A stretch of 64,000 nt of DNA. It comes from Hemiscyllium ocellatum. Its lineage: Eukaryota. Below, one piece after another: positions 13,261 to 58,772 of this stretch. Each line of letters begins with the position of its first letter. Position 1 is the stretch's first letter. Position numbers and translations under genes: made by a program. The notes under the pieces are model-generated. The model saw only the letters and a list, made by a program, of their open reading frames with translations, was not told where the DNA came from and did not search any database. The stretch covers positions 11,134,978 to 11,198,977 of the forward strand of contig NC_083409.1 in the NCBI RefSeq assembly GCF_020745735.1. Reading direction: 5' to 3'.

Positions 13261-14180
13261 GGACAGGTTCTTGGTCACCACATTCTAGGAAGGATGTGAT
13301 TGTACTTGAGAGGGGGCAGAGATTTACCAGGATGCTGCCTGGGCTGGAGGGCCAGCTATGAGGGGCGATTGGAAGGACTGGGGTTGTTTTCCTTGGAGCA
13401 GTGAAGGTTGAGAGGGAACCTCGTAGAGAGGTATAAAATTATTTGGGGCAGTGATACAGTGGGTAGGAAGGCACTTTTTACATGAGTAAAGGAATCAATA
13501 ACCAGGGACAGAGATTGAAGGTAACACAGACATGAACACGGAGAAACTAGGAGCAGGAATAGGCCATTCGCCCTTTGAGTCTGCTCTGTCATTCACTATA
13601 ATCGTGACTGATCCGCGCTCTCAAAACCATATTCCTGTTTTTCCCCCATTCCCTTCATGCTGTTAAAATGCAGAACAATTATCTCTCTCTTTTTCTTGGA
13701 TATATTCAGTTTCTTATCCTCCACAGCCTTCAGTGGTAGAGAATTCCACAGGTCGACCACTCTCTGAGTGAAGAAATGTTTCCTCATCTCAGTCCAAAAT
13801 GGTCTACCCTGTATCCTCCTGAGACTGTGTCCCCTGGTTCCAGACTCCCCACCCAGGGGACACCTCCTCCCTGCCCAGCCCTGTTGGAATTTTATACATT
13901 TCAATCAGATCCCCTCTCATCCTTCTAAACTTCAGTGAGTCCAGGCCCAGTCAAGTTGGAGAGTGTGAGTAGAGTTGAGGAGAAATGTTTACACCCAGAG
14001 GGTGGTGGGAGTCTGCAACTCACTGTCTGAAAGGCTGGTTGAGTCACAAACTGTCGAGACATTGGGGCAGTGTTTAGATATTCCCTTGTGTTGCTGTTGC
14101 CTCCAGGGTAATGGGCCAAGAGCTGGAGGATGGGATTAGTGTCATCAGATCTTTGTTTACCAGCACAGACACAATGGGCC
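13260..14180. mobile_element. Mixed-orientation CR1 3' fragments
   Basis: Peptide GESGTRGHSLRRIQGRPFWTEMRKHFFTQRVVDLWNSLP on the minus strand; plus-strand fragments on either side. Confidence 0.7.
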
Positions 14181-14306
14181 AAATGGTCTCATTCAGTGCT
14201 GTTCACATCAATGCCTCTCTGAGACAGAGAGAGAGAAGCGGAGAGAGAGAGAGAGAGAGAGAAGAGGAAATATGAGGTACTGACATGGCTCTCCCTGCCT
14301 GATGCC

Positions 14307-14360
14307 ATTTACATACTGAGGAACACCCAGTCAGACTCTCACAGGCTGCAGCTTTATAAA
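14307..14360 (+). promoter_or_regulatory. Ig V promoter: variant octamer and TATA box
   Basis: ATTTACAT at 14307-14314 (1 mismatch to ATTTGCAT) and TATAAA at 14355-14360, upstream of the leader ATG at 14421. This matches light-chain promoter geometry. Confidence 0.7.
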
Positions 14361-14420
14361 GCAGAACCCAGTGAAGGGAGAGTTTATCAGGAACCAGGCA
14401 CAGGGACAGGAGCACACACC

Positions 14421-14941
14421 ATGATTTCACACATCCAGCTGATCTGGCCCCTGGCATTCTGTGTCGCAGGTACAAATCTCTCTCCTTCCACCTTGAATCT
14501 TTAGCTGCTCTCCATTTAACTCCAATTCCACTGACTTGTGATTGAAGGGAAAATGCTGAAACCAGAGGAATGCTCAGTGTCTCCAACAATCTCTCATTTG
14601 GCAGGCTCTATCTATGACAGTTCTGACTTCACTGTGTTTCTCTCTGACCTCTCAGGTATCAATGGGGACATCATCATGAGCCAGTCTGTCGGTGGGACGG
14701 GGCCAGACTGCAACCATCACCTGTACAGCCAGTGAAGACATTATCACTTACCTTGCTTGGTACCAGCAGCGTGAAGGTCAGAAACCCTCTCTCCTGATCT
14801 ACAATGCAGCAACTCGATTCACAGGAGTCTCCGATCGATTCACCGGCAGTGGATCAGGGACCAGTTTCACCCTGACAATCAGCAACGTTCAGAATGAAGG
14901 TGTCGCTGACTATTACTGTCAGCAGCGTTACACCAGGCCTT
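14421..14941 (+). pseudogene. IGKV: Ig kappa-type (NS4-like) V segment, frameshifted
   Basis: Leader exon 14421-14469 (MISHIQLIWPLAFCVA-G), GT-AG intron 14470-14655, V exon from 14656 ([11 protein letters not shown]). The spliced frame stops at 14733-14735. The rest of the V domain (TATITCTAS...LAWYQQ...[13 protein letters not shown]...ADYYCQQ) is in another frame, implying about 11 nt deleted in FR1 (QSPPVLSV expected). Confidence 0.95.
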
Positions 14942-14969
14942 CCCAGTGATACAAAGCCGTAAAAAAATC
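14942..14969 (+). promoter_or_regulatory. V 12-bp-spacer RSS, degenerate
   Basis: CCCAGTG (14942-14948), 12-nt spacer ATACAAAGCCGT, AAAAAAATC (14961-14969). The conserved CAC of the heptamer is changed to CCC. Confidence 0.9.
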
Positions 14970-15415
14970 TCAATACACACAGCACCACCTCCTGTACTGA
15001 CACATTCATAACTACATGTTGTATGTAATAATAGACACTCAACCCTACTTCCACTACCAATACACATAGTTAGATATAAATGAAACTTTACAAATTAACC
15101 CCATGCTGGGTTTGTCACTGTCCACATCACACTCCAGTCTCTGTGCTGTACACGACTCACTGAAGGCCTCAAGTTTCCCTCTTACACTCCATGGCCACAT
15201 GTGAAGAACAGCTGCAAGATTTAACATCGAAAAATAAAGTTCACAAATCGCCCGAGTGCAGCTGGACACATCTCATCGAGAAAAACAGAATGAGTGAAAC
15301 AGAGAGGGAGAAAGACATGAATGAGGAAGAGACAGAGAGAGGCAGGGAGAGTCTGAGGGTGAATGAGACACAGACAGGGAGAGGGTGAGAGTGATGAAGG
15401 GAAGCAGAGAGCAGA

Positions 15416-15454
15416 GGTTTTTCTACAGCTTCTACACTGGGAGCTCTCACTGTG
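15416..15454 (-). promoter_or_regulatory. J 23-bp-spacer RSS
   Basis: GGTTTTTCT (15416-15424), exactly 23 nt, then CACTGTG (15448-15454). Perfect heptamer and 8/9 nonamer. Confidence 0.95.
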
Positions 15455-15489
15455 GTACACATTCAGTAAAGGAACCAAGCTCAGACTGA
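15455..15489 (+). pseudogene. IGKJ: Ig kappa-type J segment with FGxG altered to FSKG
   Basis: Encodes YTFSKGTKLRL followed by the phase-1 donor A|GTAAGT at 15490. Confidence 0.93.
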
Positions 15490-16022
15490 GTAAGTAAACC
15501 TCAATCCTTCGTTATTAAGCACTGAAACTTTCTAAAACACAAATGCTGAATTGTAGAGTCATAAAGTCATTGCGACGTACAGCATGGAAACAGACCCTTT
15601 GGTCCAACACTTCCATGCTGACTAGATATCCCAATCCAATCTAGTCCGACCTGCCAGCACACTGCCCATATTCCTCCAAACCCTTCCTATTCATATACCC
15701 ATCCAAATGCTCTTAAATGTTGCAATTATACCACCCTCCAATTGTTGAAGGTATTAGTGGGGAGCTGCAATGAATGAAATGGTTGATTGAGGAGCACTGT
15801 ATCTAACAGGATGTACAGCTGTATGTCTGTCGTCCTATTGCCCCCAGTCAGTAAGTTTTACTCACTGTGTGGTGGAGCTCTGTCCATTTGCAGCCTGTGG
15901 TCCCATTCCTGCAGCATGGAGTGAAATCAGTGAGTAGCCTCCTGCCAGTCTCAGTGTGACAGACCCGAGTTTGATGTGAGCTCTTGCTCCCTGTCCCAGT
16001 CTCTGATCTCAATGACCTCAAT

Positions 16023-16043
16023 AGCAGCAGCAGCAGCAGCAGC
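16023..16043. repeat. (AGC)7 microsatellite
   Basis: Directly visible. Confidence 0.9.
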
Positions 16044-16099
16044 ACAGTGAGACACCGAGCTCCCACCACCCCCAGCTTTAACTCTGCTCAATCACACAA

Positions 16100-19000
16100 T
16101 CACAGAACTGTTACAGTGCACAAGGAGACCATTCTGCCCACCCTGTCTCTACTGGCTCTCTGAATGAGCAATTCACTGAGTGTCATTCTCCTGCCTTCTA
16201 CCTGTCACCCTGCACATTGTTCCTTTTCAAATAACAGTCTCATTCCCTTCAGAATGTTTTAATTGAAGCTGCCTCCACCACACTCTCAGGCAGTGCATTC
16301 CACACCTTAACCACCCACTGGCTGAAAATGTTTTTTCCTCATTTTACTTTTGTTTCTTTGAACAATTACTTTCAATCTGTGGCCTCTCGCACTCAATCCT
16401 TTTCCCGATTGGGAATATTTTCTCCGTATTTACTGGATCCAAACCCCTCATGATGCTGAATTTCTTGAACAAACCTCCTCTCAGCCTTCTCTTCTCTCAG
16501 GAACTCAGTCCCGACTTCTCCGATCCACCTTCATCACTGACGTTCCTCACTACTGGAATGAGCTTTGGTTTCTCCTGATAGCTCAAACCCTCCAGTCCCG
16601 GCAACAGATGAACAACACCTTTGCTCAGCAACACTCCACAGGGCCCGACAATTCACTGTATGGGTTCTCCCTGGTTTGGCTTTCCGAAATGCAGCATCTC
16701 ACTTTCTCTATATTGAACACATCTGCCACTCCTCCACCCATTGCCTTATCTGATCAAGGTCCCGCTGTACTCTGAAATAATCTTCTTTACTATATACTGC
16801 ATAGTATAATATACAGTTAGTAAACTCACGATTTGTCACACCTACATTCACATCCAAATCATGCTTTCAAATTACAAAAGTCAGCATCAATCCTTGTGGC
16901 ATACCACTGGTCACAGACCCCCAGTCTGAAAATTAGCTCCCTGCCAACATTCTTTGTCTCCTATCTTCAAGCTAATTTTATATCCAAATTGTACCCCTGG
17001 ATCCCATGTGATCTAACCTTTCTAACCTGTGTACTATGTGGAATCTTGTGAAATACTTTGCTGAAGTCCATGTTGAAAATGTCTGCCTTTATCAATCTTC
17101 TTTGCCACTACTTCAAAAAACCTCCATCCCTCAGAATCCCCTCAAAACAATGTACCCACCGCTGACATCAGGCTCAACGGTCTATATTTCCCTGGCTTTT
17201 CCTTACAGCCTTTCTGAAATAATGGCACAGCATTAGCCAACCTCTCCAGTTCTCTGGCTCCTCACCCATGGCTGTTAATGACACAAATATCTCAGCAAGG
17301 GGCCCAGCAATCTCTTCCCAAGATTCACACAGTATTCTGGGATACACCTGATCAGATCCCAGAAGCTGTAAAAAAATCTCAATACACACAGCACCACCTC
17401 CTGTACTGACACATTCATAACTACATGTTGTATGTAATAATAGACACTCAACCCTACTTCCACTACCAATATACATAGTTAGATATAAATGAAACTTTAC
17501 AACTTAACCCCATGCTGGGTTTGTCACTGTCCACATCCACTGTTCCCTGGCTTCCATGTCATTCTCCACAGTAAACACAGCTGCAAATTATTTGTTTAAG
17601 ATCTCACCCATCTCCTCTGTCTTACCAAAAAGCAGCACCTTGCATTTATCTGAATTAAACTCCATCTGCCATTCCTCCGCCCAATGGCCCAGTTGATCAA
17701 GATCCCTTTGTGCTCTCAGATAATCTTCTTCAGCGTCCACTATGCCACCAATTTTGGTGTCTTCCACAAATGTACTAATGATTCATCCTTTCTTCACATA
17801 CAAATCATTTATATAAATAGTGAACAACAATAGCACAAGGTTCCACAAAAAAAAACTGATGACAATCCCAAATCAGTCCTTGCCTTTCCAAATGCATGTA
17901 GATGCTGTCTCTCAGAATTCCTTCCAACAACTTACACACCACTGGTGTTAGACTCACTGGCCTGTAGTTCCTTGGCTTTTCCTCGCAGCGTTTCCTCAAT
18001 AATGGCACAACATTAGCCACCCTCGAATCAGACAGCAACTCACCCATGACTGTTGATAATACAAATATATCGGCAAGGGATACAGCAATCTCTTCTCTAG
18101 CTTCTCACATTGTCCTGGGATACACTTAGAGTCATCGATCAGATTTATCAAATTTATGCATTTTACGAGCTCCTCTTCTGTAATGAGGATTCTTGTCAAG
18201 ACATTGTTATTTATTTCCCTGAGTTCCCAAGCTTTCATGTCTTTCTCCCCAGTATATATATTCGTGAAATATCCCTTTAGGATGTCACCTGTCTTCTCTG
18301 GGCCCACACATATGTGACCTCATTTATCCTTAAGGGGTGTTATTCAGTCCCCAGCTAATCTTTTGCCCTTTTATTATTCAAAGAACACAGAACATAGAAC
18401 ATTACAGCACAGTACAGGCCCTTCAGTCCTCGATGTTGCACTGAGGTGTGGAACCCATCTGTAGCCTATCTATCCCACACTATTCCATTTTCATTCCACA
18501 TGTTTATCCAATAACCATTTCAATGCCCTTAAAGTTGGCAAATATACCACTGTTGCAGGCAGTGCATTCCACTCCCCTAATTCTCTCTGAATAAAGAAGC
18601 TACCCCTGACATCTGTCCAAAATTTATCACCGCTCAATTTGAAGTAATGTCCCCTCATGCTATCCATCACCATCTGGGGAAAAAGGCTCTCACTGTCCAC
18701 CCTTTCTAATCCTCTGATTATCTTGTATGTCTCAATTAAGTCATCTCTCAACCTTCTTCCCTCTAATGAAAACAGTCTCAAATCCCTTAGCCTTTCCTCA
18801 TAAGACCTTTCCTCCATACCAGGTAACATCCTAGTCAATCTCCTCTGAACCCTTTCCAAAGCTTCCACATCCTCCCAATAATGCTGTGACCAGAATTGTA
18901 CGCAATACCCCAAGTGCGGCCGCACCAGAGTTTTGTACAGCTGCAACATGACCTCATGGCTCCAAAACTCAATCGCTCTGCCAATAAAAGCTAACATACA

Positions 19001-22000
19001 AACCTTACGCCTTCTTAACAACCCTATCAACCTGGGTGGCAACTTTCACAAATCTATGTATATGGACACCAAGATCTCTCTGCTCATCTATACTACCAAG
19101 AATCTTACCATTAGCCCAGTACTCTTTATTCCTGTTGCACTTTCCAAAATGAATCATCTCACACTTGTCCACATTAAACTCCATTTGTCACCTCTCAGAC
19201 CGCCTCTGCAGCTTATCTATATACTTGTGTAATCTACAATATCCTTCGGCACTATCCACAACTACACTGACCTCAGTGCCATTCGCAAAATTACTAACCC
19301 ATCCTTCTGCACCCTCATCAAGCTCATTTATAAAAATGACAATCAACAATGACTCCAAAACAGATCCTTGTGTAACACCACTAGTAACTGAACTGCAGGA
19401 TGAACATTTCCCATCAACCATCACCCTCTGTCCTCTTTCAGCAAGCCAATGTCTGATCCAAACCACTAAGTCACCCTCAATCCGATGCCTCTGTATTTTG
19501 TGCAATACCCTACCGTGGGGAACCTTATCAAATGCCTTACTGAAATTCATATACATCACATCAACCACTTTACCCTCATCCCCCTGTTTGGTCACCATCT
19601 CAAAGAACTTAATCAGGTTTGTGAGACACGACCTACCCTTCATAAAACCTTGTTGAGTGTCCCAAATCAACTTATTTCTCTCTGGATGATTATAAATCCT
19701 ATCTCTTAGAAATTTTTCGAACACTTACCAACAACCGAAGTAAGGCTCACTGGTCAGGTTTGTCTCGACTCCCCTTCTTAAAATCTCCTTTTTATTCACT
19801 TTAATTCTTCCACTTCTGCCCTCAAAAGGGCTCAGGAATTGCTTGCCCTCCCTTAAGTATACTTCGACTGTTCCTGATCTATATCCCATATTATTCACCT
19901 CAGGAATTTCTTGCCAACCTTTGACTTTAGATTATTCAGAGCTGATGTGTCCTTACTCCATGGAAGTTGGTGCTTTCCCCATTTGGTCATTTTGACCCCC
20001 GAATGGCCTTTGTTCTTTTCCACTGTCTCCCTAAACTTTGCGATACAATGATCACTCTTCCCTAAATGTCCTCTCACTGACACTTGATCTACTTGAGCCT
20101 CCTCATTCCCAAAATCCAGGCTGAGCAGAGCCTCCTTTCTCATTGGATTGGAAACACACAACTGGAGAAAATTCACCTGAATACACTCCCACAATGCTGG
20201 CCAAGATCTGCCTATGACACTGCTCCAATCACAGGCTAAATTCAGATAATTAAAGTCCCCCATTATAATAACTCAGTAATGGTTCCAGTTCTCTGTAAGT
20301 TACTTGGAGATTTATTCCTCTGCATCCAGCCCACTGGTTGGTGAAACATAGACTGCACTGAGGATTCTGTGTTCATAGAGTCAGAGAGAAACAGACTCTT
20401 CGGTCCAACCCATCCATGCCGATGAGATATCCCATCCCAATCTAGTCCCACCTGCCAGCACCTGGCCCATATCCTTCCAAACCCTTCCTATTCTTATACC
20501 CATCCAAATGCCTCTTAAATGTTGCAATTGTACCAGCCTCCACCACATCCTCTGGCACCTCATTCCATGCATGTACCACCCTCTGCATGAAAAAGTTGCC
20601 CCTTTTATATCTTTCCCCTCACACCCTAAACCTATGCCCTCTAGTTCTGGATTCCCCTACCCCAGGGAAAAGACTTTGCCTATTTATCCTATCCATGCCT
20701 CTCATAATTTTGTAAACCTCTATAAGGTCACCCCTCAGCCTCCGACACTCCAGGGAAAACAGCCCCAGCCTGTTCAGCCTCTCCCAGTAGCTCAGATCCT
20801 CCAACCTTGGCAACATCCTTGTAAGTCTTTTCTGAACCCTTTCAAGTTTTGCAACATCTTTCCGATAGGAAGGAGACCAGAATTGCACGCAATATTCCAA
20901 CAGTGGCCTCACCAATGTCCTGTGCAGCCGCAACATGACCTCCCAGTCCTTGGCGTTCCTCTCTGATGTTGCATCCTGGTTTCCATAGCCCTGCCAAATT
21001 AGTTTAAATCCTCCCCAATAACACTTAACAAATTACCCCACAAGGAAATCTGTCCTAGCTCTGATCAGGAGCAATCCACCTGTTCTCTTCAAGTCCCGTC
21101 TCCCCCAGACCCAGTCCTGGTGTCCCAACAATCAAAAATCCTCCCTCCTGGATCCTCTCTCCATCCCCACAGTCACCTGACTTATCCTCCAGTTCCTATT
21201 CTCACTTGCATGGAGCACTGGAAATAATCTGGAGATTCCTACATTTTAGTTCCTGCTGCTAATTCCTTCCTGAGCTCCCTAAATTCTGACTGCAGGACCA
21301 CATCACTTTTCTCCCGCTGTCACTGGGACCGATGTGGACCATGACTGTTGCCTATTCCCCCCGCTCCCCTCAGGGTGTTGTGCAGTCGCTCAGTCACATC
21401 CTTGACCCTGGCACCAGGGAGACAACACACCATCCTGGATTCCCATCTGCAGCTGCAGAAACTCCTATCGATAGCCCTCACTCTCAAATCTCCTCTTACT
21501 ATCGCTCTTCCAGTCTTCCTTGTGCCCCCCTGGACAGCTGAGCCCCCATGGTGCCATGGAATTGGCTCTGGCTGCACTCCCCAGATGAACCATCATTCTC
21601 ATCAGGATTCTGAAATGAGTCCTGGTTGGAGAGTGGGATGCACTCAAGGGATTCCTGTACTAGCTGCTTGGTCCTTTTGGACTGTCTGCTGCTCCCCCAT
21701 TCCCTCTCTCCCTGCATACGCTGAAGCTGCAGAGTGACCACATCAAGAAACTTGCTCTCCACGGAGCTCTCAGCCTCACGGACGCTCTGCACTGACACCA
21801 GCTGCTGCTCAAGCTCCAAAACCCGGAGCTCCAACTGCTGTCACTGACCACACTTCCTGCTGTCATGGTGGGAAGCATTCAGGACCTAGCAATCTCTGTG
21901 TGAAGTACCCTCAATGACATGGCCTCCATATCTTTCTTCAGCAGTGAGTTCCACAGGTTCACAAACCTATGGTGGAAGGAATTCCTCCTTATCTCACTTC

Positions 22001-24979: not shown

Positions 24980-25313
24980 GTTTTGACAACCCAGCCCAAG
25001 CTGACCCTGCTGCCCCCCCCCACCCTCCCAGGAACAGGTCAATGCCAAGGGCACTGCCACCCTGGTGTGCCTTGCCAACCATTTCTATCCCGATGAGCTG
25101 GAGGTGCAGTGGAAGAAGGACGGTGCTGTCATTTCGTACAGGGTACAGACCAGCAACTACCTGCGAGCTTCGGACAGCACCTACAGTGTCAGCAGCCTGC
25201 TGACCCTCTCTGGGTCTGACTGGGAGTCCAACGCTCGTTTCTCCTGTGCTCTCACCCACGTGACCCTCACCTCTCCCCTCAGCAAGAGCATCATGAGATC
25301 TGAATGTGTGTAG
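24980..25313 (+). pseudogene. IGKC: Ig kappa-type C exon copy 1, frameshifted near its 5' end
   Basis: Acceptor TTTCAG| at 24979. The C-domain frame reads VCLANHFYPDELEVQWKKDG...FSCALTHVTLTSPLSKSIMRSECV*. Relative to copy 2 there is a -2 nt and a +7 nt indel in the first 60 nt, so the J-spliced frame is out of register. Confidence 0.93.
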
Positions 25314-32579: not shown

Positions 32580-33700
32580 ACAATCATTTAGCACAGAAAC
32601 AGATCGTTTGGTTCAACTCATCCATGCCAACCAGATATCCGAAATTAATCTATTCCAATTTGCCAGGATTTGGCCCATATCCCTCTAAACTGTTACTATT
32701 CATAAACCCATCCAGATGCCTTTTAAATGTTGTAATTGTAATAGCCTCTGGCAGCTGATTCCATACACGCACCACCCTCTGCATGAAAACGTTGCCCCTT
32801 AGATCCCCTAAAAGTTTTTCCTCTCTCACCTTAAACATATGGCCTCTAGTTTTGGACTCACATTCTCTGGGGAAAAATACCTTGGCTATTCACCTTATCA
32901 ATGCTCTTCATGATTTTATAAACCTCTATAAGGTCACCCTTCAGTCTCCATTGCTTCAGGGGAAATAGCCCCAGTCTATTCACCCTCTCCCTATAGCTTA
33001 AAACCTCCAACCCCAGCAACATCCTTACAAATCATTTTTCTACCCTTTCAAGTTTAACACCATTGTTCCTATAGCAGGAGGACCAGAACTGAGCCCTGTA
33101 TTCTCAAGGTGTCCTCATGGGCAGCACGGTGGCACAGTGGTTAGCACTGCTGCCTCACAGCGCCAGGGACCTGGGTTCAATTCCCGCCTCAGGCGACTGA
33201 CTGTGTGGAGTTTGCACATTCTCCCCGTGTCTGCGTGGGTTTCCTCCGGGTGCTCCGGTTTCCTCCCACAGTCCAAAGATGTGCGGGTCAGGTGAATTGG
33301 CCATGCTAAATTCCCCGTAGTGTTAGGTAAGGGGTATGGGTGGGTTGCGCTTCGGCGGGTCGGTGTGGACTTGTTGGGCCGAAGGGCCTGTTTCCACACT
33401 GTAAGTCTAATCTAACCAATGGCCACTTTTGGGGCCAGCTAGAACATGACAACCCAATTCCTATACTCACCGCACAGACCAATAAAGACAAGTGTATCAA
33501 TCCCCAACTTCACTCCTGTGTTTACCTATGGCTTCACTTTCAAGAAACTGTGAATCTGCAATTCAAGGTCTCTTTGCTCAGCAACACTCCCCAGGACTTT
33601 GTCCTTATTTGCCTTACCAAAATACAACACCTTACATTTATCTAAATTATCTCCATCCACCACTCCTTATCCAATGGCCGATCTGAACAAGCATTGATCA
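32580..33700 (-). mobile_element. CR1 3' fragment interrupted by a SINE
   Basis: Peptide FKVREEKLLGDLRGNVFMQRVVRVWNQLP; the CR1 sequence resumes after 33415. Confidence 0.75.
33119..33415 (+). mobile_element. Full-length young HE1/V-type tRNA-derived SINE
   Basis: Pol III A box TGGCACAGTGG, B box GGTTCAATTCC, central conserved domain, CR1-like 3' tail ending GTCTAATCTAA. Confidence 0.9.
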
Positions 33701-37180: not shown

Positions 37181-37493
37181 TAGATTAGATTAGACTTACA
37201 GTGTGGAAACAGGCCCTTCGGCCCAACAAGTCCACACCGACCCGCCGAAGCGAAACCCACCCATACCCCTACATTACCCCTTACCTAACACTACGGGCAA
37301 TTTAGCATGGCCAATTCACCTGACCCGCACATCTTTGGACTGTGGGAGGAAACCGGAGCACCCGGAGGAAACCCACGCAGACACGGGGAGAACGTGCAAA
37401 CTCCACACAGTCAGTCGCCTGAGTCGGGAATTGAACCTGGGTCTTCAGGCGCTGTGAGGCAGCAGTGCTAACCACTGTGCCACCGTGCCGCCC
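37181..37493 (-). mobile_element. Full-length young HE1/V-type SINE
   Basis: Near-identical reverse complement of 33119-33415. Confidence 0.9.
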
Positions 37494-37523
37494 AAATGTT
37501 CTGAGGGATCTGGGATCACCGTG

Positions 37524-42484: not shown

Positions 42485-42780
42485 TTAGATTACTTACAGT
42501 GTGGAAACAGGCCCTTCGGCCCAACAAGTCCACACCGACCCGCCAAAGCACAATTCACCCATACCCCTAACCTAACACTACGGGCAATTTAGCATGGCCA
42601 ATTCACCTGACCCGCACATCTTTGGACTGTGGGAGGAAACTGGAGCACCCGGAGGAAACCCACGCAGACACGGGGAGAATGTGCAAACTCCACACAGTCA
42701 GCCGCCTGAGGCGGGAATTGAACCCAGGTCCCTGGACTGTGAGGCAGCAGTGCTAACCACTGTGCCACCGTGCCACCGTG
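42485..42780 (-). mobile_element. Young HE1/V-type SINE
   Basis: High identity to the 37181 copy. Confidence 0.9.
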
Positions 42781-44660: not shown

Positions 44661-44909
44661 GATTACCATGTACTGTTCTCCCTCGGCTGATGAATCAGTC
44701 TCTCGGCCACGTTGAACACAGAGTGTACACTGGGTGGGGGACTTCAAACTGCACCAGCAAAAAGGGAATTTTAACAAACGGCCATTCTTTTGTTAGGTTT
44801 GTTCTGTATTGGATACAAATGTTCAAACAACTAGTTCTGCTAGTTAATGTTTGGAGAGTTGAAATCCTGCGAAATGGCAGGGACTTAAATTGGTTCTTTT
44901 GTCTTTCAG

Positions 44910-45292
44910 GCCGTGAGAACTCTCAGCCCAAGCTGACCCTGCTGCCCCCTTCCCCAGAGCAGGTCAATGCCAAGGGCACTGCCACCCTGGTGTGCCTTGC
45001 CAATCACTTCTATCCCGATGAGCTGGAGGTGCAGTGGAAGAAGGACGGTGCAGTCATTTCGGACGGGGTTCTGACCAGCAACTACCTGCTGGCTTCGTAC
45101 CGCACCTACAGTGTCAGCAGACTGCTGACCCTCTCTGGGTCTGACTGGGAGTCCAACGCTCACTTCTCCTGTGCCCTCACCCACGTGACCCCTCCCCTCT
45201 CCACTCAGCAAGAGCATCAGGAGATCAGAATATGTGTAGAGTGTTGGAGACAGTCCACAGAGGAGACACAACTTAAAATAGAACAGGGCTGA
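44910..45292 (+). pseudogene. IGKC: Ig kappa-type C exon copy 2; open from the splice acceptor, with a +1 frameshift after the second Cys
   Basis: Acceptor TTTCAG| at 44909. Reads (S)RENSQPKLTLLPPSPEQVNAKGTATLVCLANHFYP...FSCALTHVT. An extra C then gives a 33-aa tail to TGA at 45290-45292. The ancestral stop TAG is at 45237-45239, preceded by GAA TAT GTG (Cys changed to Tyr). Confidence 0.93.
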
Positions 45293-50500: not shown

Positions 50501-51433
50501 CGGCACTGATATATTTCTATCATTAGTTTGTTAAGCAATATTAAAATGTCTGTGATCAGAAAGAAAAAACAAAACATTGTGCAGATTGTTGAACAGGCCC
50601 CTACACCTGGGCCTGAGGCAGGAGACCAAGCTCCAACACACTGGCCTCACTTCACACCAACCCTCACACAGTGCGGGGTCATGAACTCTGGCCATCAATC
50701 TCTCAGGGACCGGGACAGAGTAAGGGAACAGGGACAATTGTAGAAGAGTCAATAAGGAGTAAAACAAGATGGAGAGGGTGTTTTGGAGGAGGAAATATAC
50801 TTTGTCCCACTCAGTACTGACATTGTCTATGTGTATCAGAGAATGAATAAAAAAACACACTTTGAAGCCAAACAAATCACAGAGGACATTTCATTGGGGT
50901 GGGATAAATATCCTGGTTCAGAAGCTTTTCCCCCCTCCGTCTCTCTCTCTCTCTCCTCATTTCTCCAGATTGAACCGGTTAGACCCGAGCAGGGCCCCAG
51001 TTCATTTGATCTGTTCAGGGACAGTGGAACAGCTGCCCTCTAGTGGCTATAGAGTGTTGGTACCGCTGCTGAGAACCACGCGTCAAGTCCTGGGCTATGA
51101 GCATCTGAACGAAACAGCAGCCATTCCGGTGGATTCCAGTGGGAATAAGTTATCAGTTGTTTCGGCCTTGTTCCCCAGTCAGTCAATCAGGCCATGGCTG
51201 ACCTGGAACATATTCCCACTTAATTCTGTAACCCTTACCTTCCTAGTAAATGAAAATTGGAGAGTAGACAGACACAAGACAGAGCGAGGGCTCAGAGAAC
51301 ACAGAGAGCTTTCACTCTGCACAGCAAGGCTGTCACGGGAAACATCTGGTGAAAGTCTTGGAAGGTGGTGGGAGGAGAGAGGCATGGAAAAAGAGACCTG
51401 ACAGTTCAAAGTAAAAGCTCAACACATTTTTTT

Positions 51434-51656
51434 TTAGATTACTTACAGTGTGGAAACAGGCCCTTCGGCCCAACAAATCCACTCCTAACACTATGGGCAA
51501 TTTAGCATGGCCAATTCACCTAACCTGCACATTTTTGGACTGTGGGAGGAAACCATAGCACCTGGAGGAAACCCACGCAGACAGAGGGAGAATGTGCAAA
51601 CTCCACACAGAGAGTAGCCTGAGGTGGGAATTGAATACTGTGCCACCGTGCCGCCC
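51434..51656 (-). mobile_element. HE1/V-type SINE with internal deletions
   Basis: Tail, core and head are present; two segments are missing relative to the 37181 copy. Confidence 0.85.
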
Positions 51657-58028: not shown

Positions 58029-58115
58029 GTCCAACGCTCATTCTCCTGTGTCCTCACCCACGTGACCCTCCCCTCTCCCCTCAGCAAGAGCACCAGGAGA
58101 TCAGAATGTGTGTAG
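58029..58115 (+). pseudogene. IGKC: Ig kappa-type C exon copy 3, 3' remnant only
   Basis: Retains ...CVLTHVTLPSPLSKSTRRSECV* and a full 3' UTR. About 310 bp (splice acceptor plus about 80 codons) are missing relative to C2. Confidence 0.92.
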
Positions 58116-58772
58116 TGTGTTTGAGACAGTCCACAGAGGAGACACAACTTTAAATAGAACAGGGCTGAGCTGGCAGGACAAAGGTCATTGTCAGCACTGA
58201 ATTTCAACTCTCTTCCTTCTTGAGACTGGCCTCTGGGAGACTCTGAGGTTCAGGGGTTAAGGCAGGTTACTGTGACACTGTAGAGAGAGCTTCACTCTGT
58301 ACCCAAACAGTGCTGTCCCTGTCCTGGGAGTGTTTGACGAGGACAGTGTGGAGACAGCTTTATTCTGTTTCTTATCCTGTCCCTGTCCTGGGTGTTTTGG
58401 TGGGAACAGTACGGAAAGAGCTTTACTCTGGATCTGACCCTATTCTGTCCCTGTCCAGGAGACTGTTTGTTGGGGACAGTGTTGAGTTGTAATAACAAGC
58501 ATAACCTTTCAAAGATTGAAAACTGTGAGCTGTATAAAAACAATGTGAACCTCAGAAGTCTCTGCTTCAGTAAACCAGATCTCCTTCCTGCTCAGCCACC
58601 AGTTCCAATTTAAGGTTTTGTCACTGTTTAAAGGGACAGGATTCTCAGGTTATTGAGAAAATCTCCACAAGTGTTTTCCTCAAGCTCCATTGTGGCTGTG
58701 AATTTGAGCAGCTTCCTCTGTCTGGGCTGTTAATTGCTGACTGTTTTCTGTCAATGTCAATCTGGAAAAGGG

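What the first reader, a model, noticed from the sequence alone, without database searches (positions are those of the whole stretch)
17357..17537. RSS-anchored piece of V-J intervening DNA pasted into the J-C intron: possible scar of a germline break at the V signal end
Seen: 17363-17537 is an ungapped copy of 14954-15128 with about 3 substitutions. The donor begins inside the V 12-RSS. The 6 nt before the copy, TCCCAG (17357-17362), match the V coding end and heptamer start (14941-14946); 7 nt (TGATACA) are then skipped. The copy sits in an antisense CR1. Compared with the same-family CR1 at 18117-18240, about 75-80 nt of the host are missing at the site, with no TSD. Known: RAG cuts at the heptamer border, signal ends can reinsert, and shark germline-joined Ig genes have been attributed to germline RAG activity. 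Inference: a break at or near the V signal end supplied or templated this insert. Polymerase-theta templated insertion unrelated to RAG is an equally open explanation.
Basis: partly seen in the sequence, partly recalled or inferred. Interest (0 to 1): 0.7.

Follow-up and report, generated by a model that had tools for sequence, protein, structure and literature searches.

The report
Copied V-flank patch in kappa intron
A 175-base piece of the DNA just behind a shark antibody V gene has been copied into a dead retrotransposon 2.4 kb downstream in the same gene's intron. It is a real, inherited repair scar and most likely ordinary, but the copied piece lies between two recombination signals, so a germline accident of the antibody-gene recombinase stays a live minority reading.

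Summary
Window 17363-17537 is an ungapped copy of 14954-15128 with 3 substitutions, and it is the only such copy in the window. Both junctions are backed by public data from the same species.

It replaces about 85-91 nt of an old antisense LINE in the 9.5-kb J-C intron of a kappa (NS4-type) cluster. That cluster is itself a pseudogene.

TCCCAG is the LINE's own in-frame Pro-Gly codons of the SPGPD motif, not V end plus heptamer.

New here: the donor lies between the V 12-RSS and a convergent cryptic 23-RSS (15107-15145). It stops 12 nt inside one cleavage site and 17 (or 12) nt inside the other. This is the shape of a trimmed RAG-excised "signal-end" fragment. Given the left end, the chance of it is about 4-5%.

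Against RAG: the V heptamer reads CCC, the donor is still in place, and there is no TSD and no heptamer in the insert.

Verdict:
- RAG-independent break repair with a locally copied patch, about 0.55.
- Germline capture of a RAG-excised fragment, about 0.25.

An earlier scan note (s1-223323, 1.33 Mb upstream, also 175 letters) describes the same kind of thing on other DNA. I could not read that DNA.

The parts
14421..14469 (+). V leader exon (MISHIQLIWPLAFCVAG), followed by a 186-nt leader intron at 14470-14655
   Evidence: Read. The intron length equals that reported for nurse-shark NS4 genes (PMC2193156).
14656..14941 (+). V-kappa (NS4-type) exon, a pseudogene. The frame set by the leader runs into a stop. 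The frame that reads GQTATITC...WYQQ...YYCQQ is shifted, as if about 11 nt were lost in FR1.
   Evidence: Three-frame translation; sequence.
14942..14969 (+). V 12-RSS: heptamer CCCAGTG (non-canonical, CAC replaced by CCC), 12-nt spacer, nonamer AAAAAAATC
   Evidence: 1 heptamer mismatch, 2 nonamer mismatches.
14954..15128 (+). Donor segment. It extends to 15133 if a 1-nt gap is allowed.
15107..15145 (-). Cryptic J-type 23-RSS inside the V-J spacer, convergent with the V RSS: nonamer TGGGTTTGT 15107-15115, 23-nt spacer, heptamer CTCTGTG 15139-15145 (reverse complement CACAGAG, CAC intact). It is followed by CT-GTACAC, which weakly resembles the start of J.
   Evidence: one of 9 sites of this quality on both strands of the window, and 0.14% of shuffled spacers carry one. 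J-like flank, p about 0.01-0.03.
15416..15454 (+). Genuine J 23-RSS: nonamer GGTTTTTCT, 23-nt spacer, heptamer CACTGTG
   Evidence: recovered by the scan (site 15454).
15455..15489 (+). J segment (YTFSKGTKLRL; the FGXG motif reads FSKG), with splice donor GT at 15490
16677..17362 (-). Host LINE copy A, the part left of the insert. Its reverse strand reads LGSDQVYPR..EEIAGPLAEIF.., the N-terminal part of a CR1/L2-type reverse transcriptase, with stops. TCCCAG 17357-17362 is its last 6 nt.
   Evidence: 73-75% identity to relatives.
17363..17537 (+). The inserted copy of V-J spacer DNA. It carries the V nonamer and the cryptic nonamer but neither heptamer. It reaches 17541 if CACT is counted.
   Evidence: junction support.
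17538..17617 (-). Host LINE copy A resumes, collinear, with about 85-91 nt of LINE missing between the two parts. A second copy of the same LINE family (B) starts at 17618.
25005..25313 (+). C-kappa exon of the cluster. It places the insert in a J-C intron of about 9.5 kb.
   Evidence: homologues carry C1-set Ig domains.

Best explanation
This is a neutral scar of a germline chromosome break, or a stalled replication event, inside an old LINE in the J-C intron of a decaying kappa cluster. About 85-91 nt of LINE were lost. The gap was closed with a 175-180-nt patch copied from DNA 2.4 kb upstream in the same orientation. The route was synthesis-dependent end joining or template switching, or capture of a short DNA or cDNA copy of that stretch. 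RAG was not involved.

Shown: the copy, its orientation, the interrupted collinear LINE, the loss of host bases, the absence of TSD, TIR and poly(A), its presence at single-copy (homozygous-like) depth in independent data, and its youth relative to the LINE (1.7% against about 25% divergence).

Inferred: the kind of lesion, the enzymes, and that the position of the donor ends next to RSS motifs is coincidence.
For: The donor is intact and the insert is 98.3% identical to it, so a copying process from the local template explains the data without extra assumptions.

No TSD, no poly(A), loss of target bases and blunt-type junctions are the stated features of class 2 templated sequence insertions, which are read as germline DSB repair patches (PMC5110952). 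Templated insertions occur as germline variants in humans, and Pol theta drives heritable ones in C. elegans.

TCCCAG is host LINE sequence, so no heptamer-derived base is present in the insert.

The local V heptamer is CCCAGTG. The cluster also carries an FR1 frameshift and an FSKG J, so it was probably already a poor RAG substrate. The need for CAC in the heptamer is from my own knowledge of the RSS mutagenesis literature.

Earlier scan notes report 60-260-nt patches copied from 0.6-1.9 kb away inside transposons elsewhere in this genome, outside Ig loci. I did not check these.
Against: Both donor ends lie just inside a convergent 12/23 RSS pair, 12 nt and 17 (or 12) nt from the two cleavage sites. 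For a random local donor this has a chance of about 1e-3. Given the left end, and a length drawn between 50 and 500 nt, it is about 4-5% (my arithmetic on the coordinates).

Microhomology is only 0-1 nt at each junction, less than expected for Pol theta or MMBIR.

175 nt is long for a Pol-theta templated insertion.

This window holds no other young local duplicate, so I could not measure a background rate here.
Confidence: 0.55

Rival explanations
1. Germline capture of a RAG-excised fragment. In a germ-line cell, RAG paired a V 12-RSS with the convergent cryptic 23-RSS 204 bp downstream and excised a signal-ended 204-bp fragment (14942-15145, or its equivalent in an allele or close paralogue). 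The linear fragment lost about 12 nt from each end, meaning both heptamers, and was ligated by end joining into an unrelated break in the J-C intron. The donor seen today is either the untouched copy (source in trans) or was restored by homologous gap repair.
For: The insert runs from 12 nt inside the V heptamer border to 17 (or 12) nt inside the cryptic heptamer border, and it keeps both nonamers.

The pair obeys the 12/23 rule and is convergent. The cryptic site has CAC intact, 6/7 heptamer, 6/9 nonamer and an exact 23-nt spacer. It is one of only 9 sites of that quality on both strands of the window, the real J RSS included.

In mouse pro-B cells, Ig-kappa fragments excised between RSS/cRSS pairs, including 'signal-end insertions' from convergent pairs, are inserted into RAG-independent breaks (PMC5339680).

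In thymocytes, 26 of 48 reinserted RSS ends had lost RSS bases. The stated ranges are 2-12 nt, and no TSD was found (PMC2118463).

Germline RAG activity in this lineage is implied by germline-joined VJ paralogues at single-copy depth (joint 14941 to 15462 plus ACG) and by Lee et al. 2000, who asked whether the excised DNA is reinserted.

Junctions without microhomology fit ligation of a physical fragment.
Against: The local V heptamer is CCCAGTG. With only about 0.9% divergence per lineage since the event, it most likely already read CCC, so a different source copy with CAC has to be assumed.

The donor is retained.

Neither heptamer is in the insert, so no diagnostic RSS end survives.

This is a single event, and the second coincidence is only about 4-5% once the left end is given.

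The cryptic RSS was found after the fact, and its resemblance to a J duplicate is weak.

Germline reinsertion of excised V-J DNA was not reported in the papers I could search.
Confidence: 0.25
2. A single RAG cut at the V heptamer border produced a signal end. That end, with TCCCAG as a surviving trace of the V end plus heptamer and 7 nt lost internally, supplied or templated the insert.
For: TCCCAG is identical at 17357-17362 and 14941-14946. A hexamer match within 30 nt has a chance of about 1-1.5%.
Against: TCCCAG is the reverse complement of CTG GGA. It lies in frame at the Pro-Gly codons of the LINE's SPGPD motif and continues the collinear host sequence. A related LINE reads TCCTGG there, 4/6 identical with two transitions.

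A signal end would start CCCAGTG, not T-CCCAG followed by an internal 7-nt gap. No direct repeat explains such a gap.

The match depends on the CCC heptamer, which should be a poor RAG substrate.
Confidence: 0.04
3. Two-step origin: a 2409-nt tandem duplication (14954-17362), followed by a deletion of about 2.3 kb that left only its first 175 nt and also removed about 90 nt of LINE.
For: The start-to-start spacing is 2409 nt and the repeat is direct. The left junction is what the joint of a tandem duplication would look like.
Against: It needs two independent events where one template-switch or patch event suffices. Nothing remains of the rest of the supposed duplicate.
Confidence: 0.05
4. Artefact or mobile element: an assembly chimera, or the 175 nt is an ordinary interspersed repeat present at both sites.
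For: None beyond the general risk in repeat-rich Ig arrays.
Against: Independent contigs from two studies match the right junction exactly, and the left-junction 31-mers are held by several samples.

The window has only two copies. There is no TSD or TIR, and no Rfam or tRNA match.

Summed depth over 14985-15121 is only about 4-5 times single copy, whereas the V exon bins are tens of times single copy.

A paralogue contig runs uninterrupted across the donor's right boundary (15070-15201).
Confidence: 0.02

Closest known systems
Class 2 templated sequence insertions (DSB repair patches; Onozawa and Aplan, PMC5110952)
   Same: A stretch copied from elsewhere in the genome fills a break. There is no TSD and no poly(A), target bases are lost, the junctions are of end-joining type, and the change is inherited through the germ line.
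   Different: The template is only 2.4 kb away in the same transcription unit rather than distant. The target loss (about 90 nt) is larger than a microdeletion. An RNA intermediate was not tested.
Pol-theta-mediated end joining, SD-MMEJ and MMBIR templated insertions (PMC4490562, PMC2943611, PMC8421209)
   Same: A nearby template, insertion combined with deletion, and occurrence as a germline variant.
   Different: 175-180 nt is long for this class. Microhomology is only 0-1 nt at both junctions. The orientation is direct, whereas the MMB-TI signature searched for in PMC8421209 is inverted and lies within 100 bp.
RAG-mobilised Ig-kappa fragments inserted into RAG-independent breaks ('signal-end insertions', Rommel et al. 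2017, PMC5339680)
   Same: The donor lies between a V-kappa-type 12-RSS and a nearby convergent cryptic RSS. It was inserted at an unrelated site without a TSD.
   Different: That work concerns somatic events in mouse pro-B cells and human tumours. Here the event is germline, both heptamers are missing, the V heptamer is CCC, and the donor is still present.
Chromosomal reinsertion of broken RSS ends or excised episomes (Curry et al. 2007, PMC2118463; Vanura et al. 2007, PMC1820826)
   Same: RSS ends trimmed by up to 12 nt and the lack of a TSD are documented there.
   Different: Those events often fuse an RSS end to a cryptic heptamer at the target. Here the heptamer-like CACTGTT at the right junction may be partly donor-derived, so this feature is unresolved.
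Germline-joined shark light-chain genes (Lee et al. 2000, PMC2193156)
   Same: The same gene family and layout (186-nt leader intron, V-J spacer of about 500 nt). Joined paralogues exist in this species. Both are read as traces of RAG in germ cells.
   Different: Those are coding joints with the spacer removed. This would be the fate of the removed DNA, which that paper posed as an open question.

Membership tests
RAG transposition | Insert bounded by two intact RSS ends with the heptamers at the junctions | tested here: not met
   The insert starts 12 nt and ends 12-17 nt inside the two RSSs. No heptamer is present.
RAG transposition | Short target-site duplication (about 5 bp) | tested here: not met
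   The longest word shared by the 20-nt flanks is 4 nt, and it is not at the junctions. About 85-91 nt of target are deleted instead.
RAG-excised fragment inserted at an unrelated break (signal-end insertion) | Donor delimited by a convergent RSS/cRSS pair that obeys the 12/23 rule | tested here: met
   V 12-RSS 14942-14969 and cryptic 23-RSS 15107-15145. The donor ends lie 12 and 17 (or 12) nt inside the cleavage sites.
RAG-excised fragment inserted at an unrelated break (signal-end insertion) | Cleavable heptamers (CAC) at both donor RSSs | tested here: not met
   The cryptic heptamer keeps CAC, but the local V heptamer reads CCCAGTG. The state at the time of the event, or in another source copy, is unknown.
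RAG-excised fragment inserted at an unrelated break (signal-end insertion) | Donor copy deleted (cut and paste) | tested here: not met
   The local donor is intact. A trans source or homologous gap repair cannot be tested with these tools.
Trans-V(D)J reintegration of excised DNA | RSS end fused precisely to a cryptic heptamer at the target | tested here: inconclusive
   CACTGTT, a 23-nt spacer and ACAGTAAAC start exactly at 17538. However, CACT also equals donor 15130-15133, and LINE relatives read CTGA or CTAA there. The end facing this motif is also not the V RSS end.
Class 2 templated sequence insertion (DSB patch) | No TSD, no poly(A) or poly(A) signal, end-joining-type junctions with loss of target bases | tested here: met
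   definition.
Pol-theta / MMBIR templated insertion | Microhomology at the template-switch junctions | tested here: not met
   The left junction has 0 nt. The right junction has 0-1 nt, or 4 nt only with a 1-nt slip. A 6-nt TCCCAG priming model leaves a 7-nt skip unexplained.
LINE-mediated retrocopy (class 1 TSIP, transduction, RT template jump) | TSD, poly(A) tail, and the same age as the LINE insertion | tested here: not met
   There is no TSD or poly(A). The insert is 1.7% diverged from its donor, while the host LINE is about 25% diverged from relatives and full of stops.
Interspersed repeat / transposon | Many dispersed copies with shared ends, TIR or TSD | tested here: not met
   Two copies in the window, low summed depth, and no TIR or TSD.

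The most novel reading that the evidence does not exclude
The insert is the first fossil of the other product of germline V(D)J recombination. On this reading it is a fragment cut out by RAG between a V 12-RSS and a cryptic 23-RSS in a shark germ cell, trimmed to nonamer-to-nonamer, and pasted into a nearby break. It would show that RAG-excised DNA can re-enter the inherited genome.
Probability: 0.25. Interest if true: 0.8.

Novelty: new member of a known kind. Interest (0 to 1): 0.42.

Why it matters
If the ordinary reading holds, this is one more locally templated repair scar in a dead gene copy. Its value is as a dated marker (about 1.7% divergence) for the history of this kappa cluster.

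If the minority reading holds, it answers a question put in 2000 when germline-joined shark genes were found: is the excised DNA ever reinserted? That bears on how RAG, a domesticated transposase, can still reshape inherited genomes and create new split genes.

The useful outcome here is a sharper test. Look not for heptamer traces but for misplaced spacer fragments bracketed by 12/23 RSS/cRSS pairs across the roughly 200 kappa clusters of this genome.

Tried and rejected
- **Paralogous or orthologous J-C introns and V-J spacers via proteins.** The search for homologous proteins found nothing usable with the LINE piece, with the 100-aa ORF that spans the left junction, or with the C exon. The only hits were short contaminant contigs. 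No spacer tree could therefore be built.

- **Cross-species presence or absence of the insert.** Related organisms B and C hold about 0.16 of the words of the 901-nt stretch and none of the 4 left-junction words. With about 5% divergence that is uninformative. The read laying listing showed no contig of B or C over 17308-17685, and it shows only a selection.

- **The search of earlier findings by sequence and by relatives.** A look-up outside the window's coordinates is not accepted.

- **A pseudo-J behind the cryptic RSS.** Local similarity to the real J has p about 0.01-0.03. A sliding alignment scan of the window did not rank the site among its top hits; that scan's end-gap setting was faulty, since even the self-match scored 63 of 74. 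I treat this as unproven.

- **TCCCAG as a 6-nt priming microhomology.** This would place TGATACA in the insert. No repeat explains its loss, so it is kept only as an unexplained 1-1.5% coincidence.

- **A cryptic RSS at the target as the source of the recipient break.** Ambiguous, because CACT may be donor-derived.

- **Rfam and tRNA scans of 14000-18500.** Nothing found.

- **Pfam on the longer LINE-containing representatives.** These turned out to be chimeric gene models. CR1 versus L2 assignment of the host LINE was not resolved.
Full report
**1. What is there**

The window holds one unrearranged kappa-type (NS4-like) light-chain cluster on the + strand:
- leader exon 14421-14469
- a 186-nt leader intron
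- V exon 14656-14941
- V 12-RSS 14942-14969 (heptamer CCCAGTG, 12-nt spacer, nonamer AAAAAAATC)
- a 513-nt V-J intervening stretch
- J 23-RSS 15416-15454 (GGTTTTTCT, 23-nt spacer, CACTGTG)
- J 15455-15489
- the C exon near 25005-25313

The 186-nt leader intron and the spacer of about 500 nt equal the figures given for nurse-shark NS4 genes (PMC2193156).

The cluster is decaying. The V frame set by the leader runs into a stop, and the frame reading [17 protein letters not shown] is shifted. The heptamer has CCC where CAC is expected. The J motif reads FSKG instead of FGXG.

**2. The observation**

Window 17363-17537 equals 14954-15128 without gaps and with 3 substitutions: 1.7%, Poisson 95% interval 0.35-5%. 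These are the only two copies in the window, and this is its only young local duplicate. The copy starts at nt 6 of the 12-RSS spacer, 12 nt from the RAG cleavage site.

The surrounding sequence is an old LINE on the reverse strand. It reads LGSDQVYPR..EEIAGPLAEIF.., with stops and frameshifts. It aligns to LINE-derived proteins whose consensus is ..IKVDKSPGPDxVYPRxLxEAREEIAGPL.., and it is 73-75% identical to relatives.

The LINE continues collinearly to the right of the insert. Compared with a second copy at 17618-18340 and with a related element from a public contig, it lacks about 85-91 nt. There is no TSD, no terminal inverted repeat and no poly(A), and no RNA family or tRNA.

**3. Is it real DNA?**

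Contigs built from public runs of the same species in two studies cover 17378-17637 and 17388-17637 with no differences. They cross the right junction and include two insert-specific bases, at depths that fit a single-copy homozygous locus once the shared k-mers are allowed for.

All four sampled 31-mers of a 73-nt stretch centred on the left junction are held by samples of two studies. One of these samples may be the source of the assembly. An assembly artefact is very unlikely.

The summed depth over 14985-15121 is only about 4-5 single-copy equivalents. A paralogue contig also runs straight across the donor's right boundary. The 175 nt is therefore native spacer DNA of a few close clusters, not an interspersed repeat.

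**4. The TCCCAG detail**

But TCCCAG is the reverse complement of CTG GGA. It sits exactly in frame at the Pro-Gly codons of the LINE's conserved SPGPD motif and directly continues GGA TCT GAT CAG GTG TAT CCC. A related LINE reads CCA GGA there, which is TCCTGG on the + strand: 4 of 6 identical, with two transitions, in a copy that is 25% diverged overall.

So TCCCAG belongs to the host. The match to the V end also exists only because the V heptamer is CCC rather than CAC.

Using TCCCAG as a priming microhomology does not work either. The product would contain TGATACA, and nothing explains its loss.

**5. Junctions**

The left junction has 0 nt of microhomology. On the right, CACT (17538-17541) equals donor 15130-15133 after skipping one A. 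LINE relatives read CTGA or CTAA before GTTCCC. The copy may therefore be 180 nt with a 1-nt slip, or CACT may be diverged LINE. Either way microhomology is minimal. That is more like ligation of a patch than like classical Pol-theta or MMBIR switching.

**6. A new fact that bears on RAG**

I asked what the RAG idea predicts for the other end of the donor. In mouse pro-B cells, Ig-kappa fragments that get inserted into unrelated breaks are excised between an RSS and a nearby cryptic RSS (PMC5339680).

Scanning for such motifs found a J-type cryptic 23-RSS inside the V-J spacer, convergent with the V RSS:
- nonamer TGGGTTTGT at 15107-15115
- an exact 23-nt spacer
- heptamer CTCTGTG at 15139-15145 (reverse complement CACAGAG, with CAC intact)

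Only 9 sites of this quality or better exist on both strands of the 64-kb window, one of them the real J RSS. Only 0.14% of shuffled spacers contain one.

RAG cutting at this 12/23 pair would release 14942-15145, which is 204 bp. The insert is that fragment minus 12 nt on the left and 17 nt on the right, or 12 if CACT is counted. It keeps both nonamers and lacks both heptamers.

Trimming of reinserted RSS ends is documented in thymocytes: 26 of 48 events had lost RSS bases, the stated ranges are 2-12 nt, and no TSD was found (PMC2118463).

Germline RAG activity in this species is implied by contigs of germline-joined VJ paralogues at single-copy depth (joint 14941 to 15462 with ACG between). 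This matches Lee et al. 2000, who explicitly asked whether the excised DNA is reinserted.

**7. Weighing**

For a random local donor, the chance that both ends fall this close inside a convergent 12/23 pair is about 1e-3. The finding was selected for its left end, however, and the genome is fixed. Given the left end, and a length drawn between 50 and 500 nt, the right end falls in the 18-nt zone about 4-5% of the time. This is my arithmetic on the coordinates.

Points against RAG:
- The local heptamer is CCC. Since only about 0.9% divergence per lineage has passed, and the cluster carries several independent lesions, CCC probably predates the event. A different source copy has to be assumed.
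- The donor is retained. Homologous gap repair, or a source in trans, could explain this but adds a step.
- No heptamer survives in the insert.
- There is a single event.

Earlier scan notes say that 60-260-nt patches copied from 0.6-1.9 kb away occur inside transposons elsewhere in this genome (unchecked). That supports a generic process.

My odds:
- RAG-independent break repair or template switch: about 0.55
- germline capture of a RAG-excised fragment: about 0.25
- tandem duplication plus deletion: about 0.05
- artefact or repeat: about 0.02

**8. A lead I could not follow**

A first-stage note (s1-223323) reports a 175-letter 'templated copy of the V1 RSS flank captured inside the J-C intron' 1.33 Mb upstream on the same sequence. 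The equal length suggests the same insertion carried along by a cluster duplication. An independent event would change the verdict in favour of RAG. That DNA is not readable with the tools given.

**9. Novelty**

As a repair scar it is a new example of a known kind. In the papers I could search there is no report of germline reinsertion of excised V-J DNA. The minority reading would therefore be new and would matter. It can be tested directly on the full assembly.

Noticed in passing
window 14656-14948, 15455-15489: The cluster looks like a pseudogene. There is an FR1 frameshift in V (the leader frame hits a stop and the V-domain frame is shifted, as if about 11 nt were lost at a repeated GCCAGTCT). 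The V heptamer is CCCAGTG, and the J reads FSKG instead of FGXG.
   Followed up: partly
window 15107-15180: A cryptic 23-RSS lies in the V-J spacer and is followed by CT-GTACAC..TCACTGAAGG, which weakly resembles the J segment. It may be a decayed duplicate of J with its RSS (p about 0.01-0.03).
   Followed up: partly
window 14919-15466 (contigs of public runs laid): Contigs join the V end directly to J. In the window's species the joint is 14941 to 15462 with ACG between, at single-copy depth in two studies. In a related species the joints are 14919 to 15466 and 14926 to 15458, with 29 and 16 letters between. These are germline-joined VJ paralogues.
   Followed up: partly
window 44890-45256 and 58029-58132: There is a second C-kappa exon copy (89% identical) and a partial third (90%). 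BLASTN found no further V or J in the window, so these may be orphan or broken clusters.
   Followed up: no
window 33118-33415, 37185-37494, 42485-42773, 51432-51485: A roughly 300-nt interspersed repeat family at 93-96% identity occurs in both orientations, with a 51-nt piece at 51432-51485.
   Followed up: no
window 17538-17576: The sequence right of the insert reads CACTGTT, then 23 nt, then ACAGTAAAC. This cryptic-RSS-like motif starts exactly at the junction. Motifs of this loose class occur about once per 2 kb per strand, but its CACT may come from the donor.
   Followed up: partly
window 16677-18340: Two copies of the same LINE family lie head to tail (A at 16677-17617, B at 17618-18340) at 75-82% identity. 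Another antisense LINE with an RVT_1 ORF follows at 19188-19724.
   Followed up: partly
window 24990-25010: An in-frame stop lies a few codons before the conserved PPSQEQ start of the C domain. The splice acceptor of the C exon was not located.
   Followed up: no
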